Shown piece by piece: positions 1,774 to 5,466 of a stretch of DNA of 64,000 nucleotides (position 1 is its first letter; every line of letters starts with the position of its first letter). The notes under the pieces are model-generated. The model had not been told where the DNA came from. It saw only the letters and a program-made list of their open reading frames with translations, and searched no databases. Made by a program: the position numbers and the translations under genes. Source of the DNA: Macrostomum lignano (Eukaryota); NCBI GenBank assembly GCA_002269645.1, contig NIVC01003841.1:1-64000 (forward strand), in the 5' to 3' direction.

Positions 1774-2785
1774 TTAAAAAGTAGGGTAGACGGCGACGGG
1801 GCGAGTCAGGCGAGCGCTAGGAGGTGCCGACAGCACACGGTTGACCATTGGGCGCAGGAGACGGAGGCAACCTCCCGACTGCGGCAGGTAGCGTGAAACG
1901 GCGCCGCTGCGCCAGCCGCCCAGCCGCTTGATCTGCTCCACGTCGAGGCCGCTGTCGAACGCCAGACAGGCGCCACCCCGTCGTAGAGAGTGGCCTGAGA
2001 AAGCTGTCGCCGCCCAACCCGCATCTGTCAGAGCCCGAGCGAGGCGGCGGTCGAATTGACGCGATGACATCGGGCACCAGCTTCCGGCGATGTGGACGCA
2101 AAACAGCCGAGTGAGCGCCGGCGCAGACCGCAGCTTGTTAGTCTGAAAATGCCGCCGCAGGGCTTGGACAGGGCATAGTGGGTGGCTTCCGAGCGCTGGC
2201 AGCACCGCCTCCTGGTAGTCTTGTCCGCATTGGTTGGTCTTCGACTGTCGAACTCGGAGTCTCCAGCACTGACTATCGGCCTGAGTGTCGCCGACGAGAA
2301 TGGAGTGGCGCCCGCAGACATTTGCTTTCCTGAGAAGCGCCAGAAGCAGCAGAGCACGGCGGCCCAAAAGGCGGCGTCTGCAGGGTCTCTTGGGTTCACC
2401 TGGTTTGCCAGTGAAAGCAGAACAGCCGGGGTGATGGGGTCTTTCTGCTTGACTGAATGGCCGCTTGTCCGTTTGGCGCTCTTGACTGCCAGATCGATCA
2501 GGCCGGACTTGGTGATGTCGGGGAGTAGCGCCAGCTTGAAGCTCCAGCTGATGGCCGCCAGGTGTCCACCGAGGCTACCGGGTGCCACGCCGCGCTTAGC
2601 CAGGCGTCGCACATACTCGACCAAGTGCACCGGGGACGCCGCTAGTGGCTGAACACCTTCGAGGTTGCAGAAGCGCTGCCACTGTTCGAGGTTTGAAGCG
2701 TACGATGCCCTCGTACTAGGAGCCCAGGCGTCGGCGAGAAAGCGAAGGAGCGGCCCGGGTAGGCGGGAGGCAGGAGGCGCCGGAC
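1774..2785 (-). CDS. Tyrosine recombinase (ORF3), one frameshift near 2341
   Basis: AWAPSTRASYASNLEQWQRFC N-terminal helix region; catalytic set LLRKAN (R), SKTNQ (K), HSLRRGG (HxxR), GGWRS (W), SRY (Y). Adding one G to a GG run at about 2341 joins ORFs 2028-2630 and 1774-2367. Confidence 0.9.
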
Positions 2786-4594
2786 CTGCAAAAGCAAAAG
2801 GGAGGCGGAGGCAGGGCAGAGTGCGTGGCGCGAGATGCAGCAGGATTCAGCAGCTAAATCATGCAGGCTACGGTAGAAGCGGAGAAAGAAATTCTGCGCC
2901 CCGCTTCTAGAAGCAAGGCGAGAGGCCGGGTCCGCCAGGACCTGGAAGGCGCCCGGAACGTGAAAGGCCCGCAGCCGCAGACCCCACGCGTCGCAGGCAA
3001 GCGACAGCGTGTGCAGGAGCCGGTTGACGTCGTTACATGGCGAGCTGAGCTTGTTCAGCGCACCGACAGCCGCTGAGCTGTCGCTGTACACGACGATGTC
3101 CGCACCGGCGAAGCGGCCCGGGGCCGCGAGGATGCTGAGGACAGGCGTGATGGTCTCCTTAACGTTGATGTGGGCCGAAGCAAAACGGCCACCAGCGTCG
3201 TTCTTCCAGTTGATGTAGAGCCAGTCGGATTTATTGGCCTCCCGAACAATGCAGGCACCACCCGAGTTGCAGGCGTCAGTCTCGATGACGATCTTTCGAG
3301 CGTAGCGAGGCCAGATGGGCGCGCAGCCAACGGACTGAAGGCTTCTCCTCCACCAGTGCAGCAGCTCAGTGAGGTGCGGGGTCAGCCGCAATTTGTCCCC
3401 AGGTCTAGTCGCCCGGCTCGCCAGCATCAGTAGAGGGCGGATGGAAGCTCGGCCTTTCCTGGTCACGCTGCTCACCCAGGACAGCTTGCCGCAGATCCGC
3501 TGAAGGTCGCGCTTGCTGATGGCACCGCGTCGATGCAAGCAGCTCCCAAGTGCGTCTTCGAGTGCACTGAGCTTGGCCACTGGGATGCTCAGCATCCCCG
3601 ACTCTGTGTCAATCAGGACGCCCAGGAAAACCGTGCGCCGCGACGGCCCGCTAGACTTCTTTTCGTTGATGGTGAAACCGAGGCTCGTCGCCAGGCTCCT
3701 CAAGCTCTCGTAAGCCTCGACACAGGACTCGTAGGTGCTCCCGGCCACAGCGAAGTCGTCGAGGTAGCCAACGCAGGTGAACTCGCGCCGTTGCATCATG
3801 CGCACCACCGCCTTAGACAGCCTGTTGAAATGGTACACCGAGGCCGCAGCGCCGAAGCTCAGCCGGGTGTCGACCAGGTAGGTAGGCTCGCTGTCGCCGC
3901 TAAATTGCCATTTGATTCCCAGAGCGTCGAGAGAAGAAGGATGAACACCTACAGAGCGATACGCCTCCTTGAGATCGATCTTGGCCGTGAAGTCACCGGG
4001 CTTGAGTTGTGAGCAGAGGCCGCTAACCGTTTCAAACTTAATCTTGTGGTCTGCGATAAAGTGGTCGTTGACCGCACAGCCTTCCGGACGACTGCAGTCG
4101 TGGATGATACGGACTCCACCGTCCTCTTTCGGGATGGCACCAAGCGCGGAGATCTTGCACGGACGTCGGCTGACTGACACATACCGCCCGCTGGCGATCT
4201 CACGCTGCAATTGCTCTTCAACCAGCGTCTTGTACTCACTGGCGGACGAGTAGTTCTCAACTTCGGAAGGCTTAAAATCTGTTTCAGTAGTGAGCGCGAA
4301 GCCGTTTTGGACTCCGTCAATTAAAAAAGGCCCATCGGGGTCGCCGTCTAGCTCCTTCGCCCAGGCATTTGCGTCAAGGGAGCCACTCGGATTGAAATTG
4401 ATGTCGCGAATGGAGTAAAAACTTGGGATTAAAATTTGCGGCTGCCAGCTTGCCGGGGCCACTGGAGCCGCGGCTATTCGTTTTTTGCCGCGTGTTGCGT
4501 CTCGCCGTGGTCCGAGCGCAAGCAGACCCGGCACGCATGAGTGTACTTGCAATTCTGGAACTTGCAGCCACCACGGGTATTGAACTTGAGGCAC
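2642..4594 (-). CDS. YR-retrotransposon reverse transcriptase / RNase H (ORF2)
   Basis: 650-codon open frame; GAIPKEDGGVRIIHDCSRP, KIDLKEAY, DTRLSFG, YLDD; RNase H ETDAC, HINVKE, YSDS, HVPG...ADPASR. No AUG before the RT core. Confidence 0.93.
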   Translation of the reverse strand: MPQVQYPWWLQVPELQVHSCVPGLLALGPRRDATRGKKRIAAAPVAPASWQPQILIPSFYSIRDINFNPSGSLDANAWAKELDGDPDGPFLIDGVQNGFALTTETDFKPSEVENYSSASEYKTLVEEQLQREIASGRYVSVSRRPCKISALGAIPKEDGGVRIIHDCSRPEGCAVNDHFIADHKIKFETVSGLCSQLKPGDFTAKIDLKEAYRSVGVHPSSLDALGIKWQFSGDSEPTYLVDTRLSFGAAASVYHFNRLSKAVVRMMQRREFTCVGYLDDFAVAGSTYESCVEAYESLRSLATSLGFTINEKKSSGPSRRTVFLGVLIDTESGMLSIPVAKLSALEDALGSCLHRRGAISKRDLQRICGKLSWVSSVTRKGRASIRPLLMLASRATRPGDKLRLTPHLTELLHWWRRSLQSVGCAPIWPRYARKIVIETDACNSGGACIVREANKSDWLYINWKNDAGGRFASAHINVKETITPVLSILAAPGRFAGADIVVYSDSSAAVGALNKLSSPCNDVNRLLHTLSLACDAWGLRLRAFHVPGAFQVLADPASRLASRSGAQNFFLRFYRSLHDLAAESCCISRHALCPASASLLLLQVRRLLPPAYPGRSFAFSPTPGLLVRGHRTLQTSNSGSASATSKVFSH

Positions 4595-5466
4595 ACGGGC
4601 GCACCTTGGATCACCGGAATCTTCCTATCCATGCGAGAACGGGCATGTTGTGGAGTCTGCTGCGGGGCGATGAGGTGCCGTGCCACCAGCGAGAAACTCG
4701 GTCGCGCCCAGTCTTGCATGCCCGCCTGCTGCTCTCTTCTAAATGCGTCGTCGAACCGCATGATCCTGGTGGTGTCGTAACCTGCCTCGACTAGCTCACC
4801 GATCTGCACATTGTACTGCAAGTACTGCCGAACGCCTTCCAGGTCGAGCTGTCCCCTAGAGATCAGGGCGTCGAGGATGCGCGCGTTGCCGACTATCCAC
4901 TGACCGATTCCCAGCGATTCGGGTTTAGGCTGATTGGCGGTTGGATGCAGCATCTTTTCCCTACGACTCGCCGACGCCGTCCGAGGGTCGAAACCGCAGA
5001 AATCCGCAACGACGAGTGGTGCCGCCCGTAGCCCTAGTTGAGCTACTGAGGGTTCGAGCCTGGTCTCGAACCCGGGACCTCTGAGCATACTTGGGATATT
5101 CATGTCGCTACTACAATCAGAGGGCTCATTAAGAAGCTGTTGGTCCACCTCACCTGGTCTAAATCGGCCTTCCAGCTGCTGGCGCATTGCTGCCGTCTCC
5201 GATTCCAGGCTAGCTATCTTCCGCCGGAGCTCTGCTAGGTCCAGCGCCTCCCCTGCCTCCAGCCGTTGTTGCTGCTGCTGCCGCCGACCTTCGCTGTCGG
5301 TTTCCGCGGAGTTTGACGCCGCTTGTTCCCGCCGACTAGCTGCTTCGCTCTGGTTCATCGCAGTGGAGAGTCTGCTGACCAGGTCTTTCTTGTAGCCGTG
5401 CGTGCTCAGGCCCCTATCACTCAATTCTTCACGTAGCTGATTTACAGTCATCCTACGCAAACTCAT
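4474..5466 (-). CDS. YR-retrotransposon Gag (ORF1) with N-terminal SAP domain, coiled coil and C-terminal Cys/His fingers
   Basis: 330 aa; MTVNQLREELSDRGLSTHGYKKDLVSRL fits SAP consensus; C-terminal CLKFNTRGGCKFQNCKYTHACRVCLRSDHGETQH. Confidence 0.85.
   Translation of the reverse strand: MSLRRMTVNQLREELSDRGLSTHGYKKDLVSRLSTAMNQSEAASRREQAASNSAETDSEGRRQQQQQRLEAGEALDLAELRRKIASLESETAAMRQQLEGRFRPGEVDQQLLNEPSDCSSDMNIPSMLRGPGFETRLEPSVAQLGLRAAPLVVADFCGFDPRTASASRREKMLHPTANQPKPESLGIGQWIVGNARILDALISRGQLDLEGVRQYLQYNVQIGELVEAGYDTTRIMRFDDAFRREQQAGMQDWARPSFSLVARHLIAPQQTPQHARSRMDRKIPVIQGAPVCLKFNTRGGCKFQNCKYTHACRVCLRSDHGETQHAAKNE

What the first reader, a model, noticed from the sequence alone, without database searches (positions are those of the whole stretch)
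2785..5154. Predicted splice joining the Gag SAP domain to the tyrosine recombinase
Seen: the YR frame has a stop near 2850 and no AUG before its conserved N-terminal helices, but begins at a textbook acceptor on the minus strand (CTCCGCCTCCCTTTTGCTTTTGCAG|G, AG at 2787-2786). Gag contains a consensus donor CCAG|GTGAGG (GT at 5153-5152) after codon 104 in phase 1. Joining 5154 to 2785 reads ...RFRP-G-PAPP... in the YR frame, removing a 2368-nt intron and giving about 441 aa (with the one-base YR frameshift corrected). Known: SAP domains bind DNA/chromatin; DIRS/Ngaro YR ORFs commonly overlap RT and often lack an obvious start. Inference: the integrase of this element is a SAP + coiled-coil + YR fusion made from a spliced mRNA. 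I do not know whether this has been described for the family.
Basis: partly seen in the sequence, partly recalled or inferred. Interest (0 to 1): 0.85.

Follow-up and report, generated by a model that had tools for sequence, protein, structure and literature searches.

The report
Spliced Gag-leader–recombinase fusion in a retrotransposon
A young tyrosine-recombinase (Ngaro-like) retrotransposon in this flatworm-like genome almost certainly makes its integrase from a spliced mRNA that joins the first 104 codons of Gag to the recombinase, and the same intron is conserved in dozens of related elements, with no published description found.

Summary
On the minus strand, the donor CAG|GTGAGG (GT 5153-5152) follows Gag codon 104 in phase 1. 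The acceptor CTTTTGCTTTTGCAG|G (AG 2787-2786) opens the recombinase (YR) frame in phase 1. That frame has a TGA at 2849-2847 and no ATG before its conserved helices.

With a simple splice-site matrix, these two sites are the best of 198 GTs and the best of 246 AGs in the 3,993-bp element.

The pair is conserved across relatives. In 67 related elements (RT 33-46% identical), the best pre-YR acceptor is in phase 1 in 62. In 45 with enough upstream sequence, the best donor lies inside gag in phase 1 in 40. Control sites show flat phase distributions. The YR frame is -1 or +1 relative to RT almost equally, which argues against frameshifting from RT.

Two RefSeq gene models, from the limpet Patella vulgata and from amphioxus, carry exactly this Gag-N-terminus-to-YR splice, with the gag core and RT inside the intron.

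I saw no RNA reads for this element, so splicing in this host is inferred. I found no published description in the literature I could search. The exon-1 module is SAP here and SAM-like in most relatives.

The parts
1707..5699 (-). Whole YR retroelement insertion (3,993 bp): 5' UTR, gag, RT/RNase H, YR, 3' UTR. It has no terminal repeats.
   Evidence: The boundaries come from comparing the filled site in the 5' LTR of a BEL/Pao element with the empty site in its identical 3' LTR. No repeats of 12-14 nt or more lie at the ends.
5700..5702 (-). TAA (sense strand) flanking the 5' end. The same trinucleotide flanks the 3' end at 1704-1706, and the empty site has a single copy.
   Evidence: It fits the trinucleotide crossover described for DIRS-type elements (PMC3266345, PMC7192593).
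5154..5466 (-). Coding part of exon 1: Gag codons 1-104 plus the first base of codon 105.
5368..5457 (-). SAP domain (Gag residues 4-33).
   Evidence: Pfam PF02037, E=4e-9 on Gag and 6e-10 on exon 1 alone, above the gathering score.
5164..5289 (-). Predicted long helix (residues 60-101), a candidate coiled coil.
   Evidence: AlphaFold2 single-sequence model, low confidence (pLDDT about 60 here). The heptad-like pattern was judged by eye only.
5148..5156 (-). 5' splice site CAG|GTGAGG (GT 5153-5152), phase 1.
   Evidence: It is the best of 198 GTs in the element. The homologous gag-internal phase-1 donor is present in 40 of 45 relatives. It matches the host cis-donor motif GT[G/A]AG (PMC8629364).
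2786..5153 (-). Proposed intron (2,368 nt) holding the Gag core with its CCCH finger and all of RT/RNase H.
   Evidence: The introns of the Patella and Branchiostoma RefSeq models have the same content.
4474..5466 (-). Full gag ORF (330 aa), translated from unspliced RNA.
4480..4486 (-). A_AAA_AAC slippery heptamer in the gag frame, 11 nt before the gag stop. It is the likely -1 frameshift site into RT.
   Evidence: The same heptamer lies 8-26 nt before the gag stop in 13 of the 18 relatives (window copy included) where RT is in the -1 frame; 14 of the 18 have a slippery heptamer of some kind.
2642..4594 (-). RT/RNase H reading frame. It runs 143 nt past the acceptor as a non-conserved tail.
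2847..2849 (-). TGA closing the YR frame upstream of the acceptor.
2786..2812 (-). 3' splice site: pyrimidine tract plus CAG (AG 2787-2786), phase 1 in the YR frame.
   Evidence: It is the best of 246 AGs. The homologous phase-1 acceptor is present in 62 of 67 relatives and is the best AG of the whole contig in 31.
1774..2785 (-). Exon 2: tyrosine recombinase with the core-binding SAM-like N-domain and the catalytic domain (R, K, HxxR, W, Y all present).
   Evidence: Pfam PF00589, PF02899 and PF13495; alignment to relatives.
2339..2341 (-). 1-nt deletion (GG instead of GGG/GCG context) that breaks the YR frame in this copy.
   Evidence: The sister copy reads TTC TGG GCG CTT = FWAL.

Best explanation
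The element uses a retrovirus-like, three-product expression plan. Unspliced RNA gives Gag. A -1 frameshift at A_AAA_AAC gives Gag-RT/RNase H. A fraction of the RNA is cis-spliced from the GT at 5153 to the AG at 2786. This removes the Gag core and all of RT. It places the recombinase, which has no start codon of its own, in frame behind Gag's AUG and first 104 codons. The product is a 441-aa protein: SAP domain, long helix, Pro/Gly linker, tyrosine recombinase.

Shown: the sites, their rank in the element, their phase, and their conservation in relatives. Also shown: annotated gene models with this splice exist in two other phyla.

Inferred: that the splice happens in this host. Also inferred: that the shared N-terminal module either brings the recombinase into Gag assemblies through the helix or SAM-like oligomerisation, or tethers it to target DNA through SAP.
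For: (1) The donor and acceptor are each the single best-scoring site in the element, and they are phase-compatible.

(2) In 67 related loci, the best acceptor between the opening of the YR frame and the conserved YR helix is in phase 1 in 62 (binomial p=3e-24). It is the best AG of the whole contig in 31.

(3) In 45 loci with at least 700 nt upstream of RT, the best donor lies in gag in phase 1 in 40 (p=1e-14). It is the best GT of the contig in 30. In most loci it sits about 195-228 codons before the gag stop, while exon-1 length varies.

(4) Controls are flat. The second and third best donors have phases 37/30/23. The best acceptor inside the RT core has phases 29/22/16.

(5) 43 of 67 loci have no in-frame ATG between the acceptor and the YR helix. 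YR-frame peptides are unconserved, and in several loci interrupted by a stop, just upstream of the acceptor. They are conserved (LD.EV helix) just downstream.

(6) The result holds after clustering: 37 of 42 clusters for the acceptor and 29 of 32 for the donor, at 60% RT identity.

(7) RefSeq XP_050388701.2 (Patella vulgata) and XP_078682969.1 (Branchiostoma) are two-exon models. Exon 1 is the Gag N-terminus, exon 2 is YR, the intron holds gag core plus RT, and both sites are in phase 1.

(8) The sites match the host's own cis-splice motifs GT[G/A]AG and CAG (PMC8629364). The host is identified as Macrostomum lignano or a very close relative by 99% identity.
Against: I examined no RNA-seq or cDNA junction for this element or its host.

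I could not see what evidence the two RefSeq models rest on, so they may be partly ab initio.

The two M. lignano UniProt models that cover this family use the same acceptor but other donors. They look like ab initio chimeras.

My splice-site matrices are approximate and written from memory. Ranks depend on them, but the phase statistics do not.

This particular copy has a frameshift in YR, so it cannot itself make the full protein.

About a third of relatives also have an in-frame ATG shortly after the acceptor, so a non-fused YR is possible there.
Confidence: 0.85

Rival explanations
1. The recombinase is made by a second ribosomal frameshift from the RT frame into the YR frame, giving a Gag-RT-YR polyprotein. 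The splice-like motifs are then incidental.
For: In the window the RT frame overlaps the open YR frame (2846..2642) and YR is -1 relative to RT. Long ORF overlaps are a known feature of DIRS-type elements (PMC3266345, PMC6681497).
Against: The overlap contains no X_XXY_YYZ heptamer in the RT frame. The only heptamer, CCCTTTT at 2802, is out of register. Across relatives YR is -1 relative to RT in 38 loci, +1 in 27 and in the same frame in 2, so no single frameshift signal can be conserved. In 4 loci the RT ORF ends before the YR frame opens, and in 9 the overlap is under 30 nt. This rival does not explain the conserved phase-1 donor inside gag.
Confidence: 0.04
2. The strong acceptor before YR is a spliced-leader trans-splice site. 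The host trans-splices about 30% of its genes. This would give a separate SL-capped YR mRNA, with the gag donor not involved.
For: TTGCAG fits the host trans-acceptor motif [T/C]TNCAG, and SL trans-splicing is common in M. lignano (PMC8629364).
Against: The M. lignano SL ends in ...TTGCATG. Joined to the exon it reads ATG|GTC CGG, which is the RT-frame tail. That frame stops after about 48 codons and is not the YR frame. The YR frame has no ATG until far into the catalytic domain. An acceptor with a strong cis donor upstream is expected to be cis-spliced (PMC8629364). The conserved phase-1 donor/acceptor pair is also seen in the Patella and Branchiostoma gene models as a cis intron.
Confidence: 0.05
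3. YR is translated by internal or non-AUG initiation on the full-length RNA, or this lineage's YR is simply defective. The GT/AG pair is then a chance match.
For: This copy has a frameshift in YR. Some relatives have their own ATG after the acceptor.
Against: The sites are the top-ranked of 198 GTs and 246 AGs. They are conserved in place and phase over RT divergence down to about 35% identity. A 99%-identical sister copy has an intact YR, so the family is young and probably active. The element sits inside an LTR of a BEL/Pao copy whose two LTRs are 100% identical, so the insertion is very recent.
Confidence: 0.03

Closest known systems
Ngaro group of tyrosine-recombinase retrotransposons (order DIRS; Goodwin and Poulter 2004, recalled from my own knowledge as that paper is not held; also PMC3783388, PMC9210276, PMC8547959)
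   Same: Gene order gag - RT/RNase H - YR with no methyltransferase domain. The nearest RT relatives include contigs with split direct repeats of the A1...B1-A2-B2 type (L038, L053) and one with a GDSL/SGNH hydrolase ORF (L003), both typical of Ngaro. Integration leaves no classical target duplication, only a shared trinucleotide.
   Different: This copy has no terminal repeats at all. Its Gag starts with a SAP domain. None of the papers I could read mention a conserved intron or a Gag-YR fusion.
Avian leukosis/Rous sarcoma virus env mRNA (my own knowledge)
   Same: The subgenomic mRNA is made by splicing from a donor inside gag, so the downstream protein borrows gag's AUG and first codons. 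Unspliced RNA serves as genome and as gag/pol mRNA.
   Different: In ALV only 6 gag codons are borrowed and they carry no domain. Here 104 codons (100-240 in relatives), with a folded module, are fused to the integration enzyme rather than to an envelope protein.
Foamy virus Pol expression from its own spliced mRNA (PMC7828637 for context; mechanism from my own knowledge)
   Same: An enzyme of the element is expressed from a dedicated spliced mRNA rather than as part of a Gag-Pol polyprotein.
   Different: Foamy Pol uses its own AUG and is not fused to Gag sequence. Here RT still follows the Gag-Pol frameshift route and only the recombinase is spliced.
DIRS-1 of Dictyostelium and DIRS1-like elements (PMC7192593, PMC3266345)
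   Same: YR retroelements with overlapping ORFs and a trinucleotide at the integration junction. An amphioxus element with a DIRS-like RT has the same Gag-N-to-YR splice in its RefSeq model.
   Different: DIRS-1 has inverted terminal repeats plus an internal complementary region, a methyltransferase-like domain and a different ORF order. No natural splicing is described for it.

Membership tests
Ngaro-type YR retrotransposon | Encodes RT/RNase H and a tyrosine recombinase, in the order gag-RT/RH-YR, without a methyltransferase domain | tested here: met
   Pfam RVT_1 and Phage_integrase are found and no other domain. The catalytic R, K, HxxR, W and Y are all present.
Ngaro-type YR retrotransposon | Split direct repeats at the termini (A1 ... 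B1-A2-B2) | tested here: not met
   No direct or inverted repeat of 12-14 nt or more joins the ends of the 3,993-bp window copy. Relatives L038 and L053 do show the pattern.
Ngaro-type YR retrotransposon | RT groups with Ngaro RTs in a phylogeny | not tested
   No reference Ngaro, DIRS or PAT sequences were available to build a tree. The nearest relatives, at 33-46% identity, have Ngaro-like features.
Ngaro-type YR retrotransposon | Integration without a staggered-cut target duplication | tested here: met
   Filled versus empty site shows only a shared TAA at both junctions.
U2-type spliceosomal intron | GT...AG ends with a consensus donor and a pyrimidine tract plus YAG acceptor | tested here: met
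   CAG|GTGAGG and CTTTTGCTTTTGCAG|G are the top-ranked sites in the element. They match the host motifs (PMC8629364).
U2-type spliceosomal intron | Position and phase conserved in homologues | tested here: met
   62 of 67 acceptors and 40 of 45 donors are in phase 1, and controls are flat.
U2-type spliceosomal intron | Recognisable branch point 18-40 nt upstream of the AG | tested here: inconclusive
   By eye there is no clear YNYURAY match in 2788-2840. The host branch-point consensus is not known to me.
U2-type spliceosomal intron | Exon-exon junction observed in RNA | not testable with these tools
   No RNA-seq reads were available. The only indirect support is two RefSeq two-exon models in other species.
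SAP domain | Match to Pfam PF02037 above the gathering score | tested here: met
   36.3-38.9 bits against a cut-off of 23.9, residues 4-33.
Coiled coil | Long amphipathic helix with heptad periodicity that oligomerises | tested here: inconclusive
   The single-sequence AlphaFold2 model gives helix 60-101 at low confidence. No coiled-coil predictor was run.

The most novel reading that the evidence does not exclude
A single ancient phase-1 intron, holding the Gag core and all of RT, may be the general way metazoan gag-RT-YR retrotransposons express their recombinase. This would cover Ngaro-like elements and at least some DIRS-like ones. The recombinase would always be made as a fusion to a swappable Gag N-terminal module (SAP, SAM-like, or zinc-ribbon plus coiled coil). 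That module could load the enzyme into Gag assemblies or choose integration sites. This would explain the long-noted 'YR ORF without a start codon', and it appears not to have been described.
Probability: 0.5. Interest if true: 0.85.

Novelty: new variant of a known kind. Interest (0 to 1): 0.78.

Why it matters
How DIRS/Ngaro elements express a recombinase ORF that overlaps RT and often lacks an AUG has been left open in the papers I could read. A conserved Gag-donor/YR-acceptor intron gives a concrete answer that can be tested directly.

It changes how these elements should be annotated. The true integrase is about 100-240 residues longer than the 'YR ORF'. It also flags 'uncharacterized protein' gene models in animal genomes as spliced transposon products.

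The fusion gives Gag and the recombinase the same N-terminal module. That suggests a packaging or targeting logic parallel to Gag-Pol, reached by splicing. The module swapping (SAP, SAM-like, zinc-ribbon) offers a handle on integration-site choice.

Tried and rejected
- **Exact look-up of the window Gag in public assemblies:** not on record.
- **Word-indexed homologue search with the Gag protein:** no hits.
- **The same search with the fusion protein:** only YR-only proteins at 34% identity or less, and no fused protein.
- **Self-comparison of the window:** no second copy of the element.
- **Rfam scan of the window:** nothing.
- **Search for terminal repeats of the element:** none.
- **L002 (RT 41% identical):** a tandem gag-RT unit without YR, so uninformative for the acceptor/donor pairing.
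- **The two M. lignano UniProt models (P0150, P0151):** they cover the family but look like ab initio chimeras, using the same acceptor with other donors. I did not count them as evidence for the gag donor.
- **Single-sequence AlphaFold2 model of the fusion:** too poor (mean pLDDT 41) for a fold search.
- **Literature searches for splicing, intron or fusion in DIRS/Ngaro papers:** nothing relevant. The two key non-open papers (Goodwin and Poulter 2004; Poulter and Butler 2015) are not held, so prior description cannot be excluded.
- **Frameshifting, SL trans-splicing and chance:** considered and rejected as the main explanation, as set out under the rival explanations.
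Full report
**What is in the window**

The finding lies in a 3,993-bp retroelement on the minus strand (window 1707-5699). It contains:
- a gag ORF (5466..4474, 330 aa);
- an RT/RNase H frame (4594..2642);
- a tyrosine-recombinase (YR) frame (2785..1774), broken once by a 1-nt deletion at about 2340.

Pfam finds SAP at Gag residues 4-33, RVT_1 in the middle ORF, and Phage_integrase with its N-terminal SAM-like domain in the last ORF.

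The boundaries are exact because the element is inserted in the 5' LTR of a BEL/Pao LTR retrotransposon. That element's two LTRs are otherwise 100% identical. The filled site reads ...TTAATTA|element|TTA-TTTCTTTAACA, and the empty site in the 3' LTR reads TTAATTA-TTTCTTTAACA. So one trinucleotide (TAA on the element's strand) sits at both junctions. This matches what is described for DIRS-type elements (PMC3266345, PMC7192593). The copy has no terminal repeats.

A 1,156-aa UniProt model from Macrostomum lignano (A0A1I8HP12) is 99% identical over the element's proteins. The host is therefore that flatworm or a very close relative. The model also shows the intact reading of the YR at the deletion (CCFWALLRKANV).

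**Check of the observation**

Every coordinate is right:
- The donor is CCAG|GTGAGG, with GT at 5153-5152 after codon 104, in phase 1.
- The acceptor is CTCCGCCTCCCTTTTGCTTTTGCAG|G, with AG at 2787-2786.
- The YR frame has TGA at 2849-2847 and no ATG before the conserved helices.
- The join reads RFRP-G-PAPPASR and gives 441 aa.

I scored all GT and AG dinucleotides on the element's sense strand with approximate metazoan donor and acceptor matrices. These matrices are my own, written from memory. The proposed donor is the best of 198 GTs (11.3 bits, next 7.5). The proposed acceptor is the best of 246 AGs (13.1 bits, next 8.6). Both fit the cis-splice motifs reported for M. lignano, GT[G/A]AG and CAG (PMC8629364).

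**Relatives**

The closest RT in the protein collection is 46% identical, on Logan contig L001. It has the same layout. The RT frame reads on past RNase H, and the YR is in another frame that opens after a stop and has no Met. The acceptor AATTCCTTTCTTTGCAG|AT is the best of that contig's 162 AGs and is in phase 1.

An RT-profile scan of metagenome contigs gave 80 more loci with 33-43% RT identity. I located RT and YR in all loci with profile HMMs. I then asked two questions.

First, which is the best acceptor between the point where the YR frame opens and the first conserved YR helix? This span has a median length of 114 nt.
- The acceptor is in phase 1 in 62 of 67 loci (chance is one third, p=3e-24).
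- It is the best AG of the entire contig in 31 loci and among the top three in 47.
- Its consensus is a T-rich tract, N, C (59 of 62), AG, then G or A, then T.

Second, which is the best donor upstream of RT?
- In 45 loci with enough sequence, it lies in the gag ORF in phase 1 in 40 (p=1e-14).
- It is the best GT of the contig in 30.
- In most loci it sits about 195-228 codons before the gag stop, while exon-1 length varies (about 100-240 codons in most loci).
- Donor and acceptor phases agree in 35 of 45 loci.

**Controls**
- The second and third best donors have phases 37/30/23.
- The best acceptors inside the RT core have phases 29/22/16.
- Results hold per cluster at 60% RT identity: 37 of 42 clusters for the acceptor and 29 of 32 for the donor.
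- Of the 67 loci, 43 have no in-frame ATG between the acceptor and the YR helix.
- In the YR frame, peptides upstream of the acceptor are unconserved, and in several loci a stop lies within eight codons.
- A conserved LD.EV helix starts 8-12 residues after the junction.

**Rivals**

*Frameshifting from RT into YR.* The window has no in-register slippery heptamer in the overlap. Across loci the YR frame is -1 relative to RT in 38, +1 in 27 and the same frame in 2. In some loci the RT ORF ends before the YR frame opens. A conserved motif cannot serve both directions of shift. This rival also does not explain a conserved donor in gag.

*Spliced-leader trans-splicing.* This is common in the host. 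However, the 35-nt SL ends in ATG. Joined to base 2785, it reads the RT-frame tail, which stops after about 48 codons and is not the YR frame.

*Chance or decay.* This is unlikely. The sites are conserved over deep divergence. The family is young: there is a 99%-identical sister copy, and this copy sits inside an LTR pair with no differences.

**Independent gene models**

A full HMMER scan of 1.84 billion representative proteins with the predicted fusion returned several proteins in which a YR domain follows a long N-terminal extension. Two are RefSeq models whose loci I could read.
- **XP_050388701.2 (Patella vulgata).** Exon 1 is the first 124 codons of a gag ORF, with donor GCAA|GTATGT in phase 1. 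The 2,248-nt intron holds the gag core, the CCCH finger and the whole RT/RNase H ORF. The acceptor is TTATTTATTTCTAAACAG|AT in phase 1. Exon 2 is the YR.
- **XP_078682969.1 (Branchiostoma).** Exon 1 is 211 codons of a gag-like ORF. Its donor GAGAG|GTAAGA is the best GT of the element and is in phase 1. The intron holds the rest of gag and a DIRS-like RT. The acceptor is CTCTTTCGCAG|CT in phase 1.

I cannot see what RNA evidence these models rest on. They still show that an independent pipeline arrives at the same architecture in two more phyla.

**How it most likely works**

Unspliced RNA encodes Gag. A -1 shift at A_AAA_AAC (4486-4480), 11 nt before the gag stop, gives Gag-RT. This heptamer recurs in 13 of the 18 loci (window copy included) where RT is in the -1 frame; 14 of the 18 have a slippery heptamer of some kind. 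Twelve others have RT in frame directly after the gag stop, a readthrough layout.

Splicing of a fraction of the RNA gives the only mRNA from which the recombinase can be translated. The product is a fusion to Gag's N-terminal module. In the window this module is SAP plus a predicted 42-residue helix, followed by a Pro/Gly-rich linker that contains the junction. In most relatives exon 1 carries a SAM-like pattern (W..L..T..L..GF.S.E.L..L...D....P.GQ..LL), with weak Pfam SAM hits. In a few it carries a zinc-ribbon-like motif plus coiled coil.

Two ideas follow as inference only. The shared module may load the recombinase into Gag assemblies. Alternatively, it may tether the enzyme to target DNA, which is AT-rich at this insertion site.

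**Comparison with what is known, and novelty**

The element is Ngaro-like in gene order, in its relatives and in its integration. This copy, however, fails the split-direct-repeat criterion.

The expression logic resembles ALV/RSV env, where a donor inside gag lends the AUG and first codons. It also resembles foamy virus Pol, where an enzyme is made from its own spliced mRNA.

None of the DIRS/Ngaro papers I could read mentions splicing, an intron or a Gag-YR fusion. The two central non-open reviews are not held. I therefore rate this a new variant of a known kind. Two caveats apply: a prior description cannot be excluded, and RNA-level proof is still missing.

Noticed in passing
window 1462-11832 (+): A complete BEL/Pao LTR retrotransposon. 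Its LTRs are 256 bp (TG...CA), 100% identical apart from the YR-element insertion: 1462-1706 plus 5703-5713, and 11577-11832. It has a 5-bp target duplication GTTTC (1457-1461 and 11833-11837) and a primer-binding site TGGCGCCCGAAC at 5714-5725. Pfam finds DUF1758 and Pao peptidase and integrase. Its internal ORFs are split over several frames.
   Followed up: partly
window 1704-1706 and 5700-5702; element 1707-5699: The YR element has no split direct repeats, no inverted repeats and no internal complementary region. How a repeat-less 4-kb unit could regenerate its ends from an internal transcript is unexplained. Several related contigs look tandem or circularly permuted (L002, L004, L021, L041, L069, L085).
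   Followed up: partly
window 4480-4486 (-): A_AAA_AAC slippery heptamer in the gag frame, 11 nt before the gag stop, with RT in the -1 frame. The same heptamer occurs in 13 of the 18 loci (window copy included) where RT is in the -1 frame, and 14 of the 18 have a slippery heptamer of some kind. Twelve other relatives have RT in frame right after the gag stop, a readthrough layout.
   Followed up: partly
L003-L085 (exon-1 peptides): The Gag N-terminal module upstream of the conserved donor differs between lineages. It is SAP in the window and in M. lignano A0A1I8G0Z6, SAM-like in most metagenome relatives, and a CxxC...C zinc-ribbon-like motif plus coiled coil in L024 and L070. The Gag core after the donor is conserved.
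   Followed up: partly
P0150 (UniRef A0A1I8HP12) and P0151 (A0A1I8G0Z6), Macrostomum lignano: Public gene models named 'PH domain-containing protein' and 'SAP domain-containing protein' are chimeras built over copies of this transposon family. One runs on into a host PH-domain gene.
   Followed up: partly
L003 564-1613: One related element carries extra ORFs with NADAR and GDSL/SGNH-lipase domains upstream of gag.
   Followed up: no
window 26051-27331 (+): An intronless 426-aa ORF that is a rhodopsin-family GPCR (Pfam 7tm_1, E=7e-25).
   Followed up: partly
window 51332-52428 (-): Two adjacent ORFs, the downstream one with a caspase domain (Peptidase_C14, E=9e-14). This is probably a host caspase-like gene split by an intron or a frameshift.
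   Followed up: partly
window about 13900-15350, 17600-18300, 19770-20240, 21030-21680, 22660-23500, 30790-32470, 32750-35580, 35900-37300, 40450-42900, 43330-44350, 62290-63650: More than a quarter of the window is made of long micro- and minisatellite arrays with strong strand-composition skew (GC skew up to 0.5).
   Followed up: no
window 1-800 (-): Open reading segments at the window edge (for example 159-404) have no Pfam match. They may be exons of a host gene that runs off the window.
   Followed up: no
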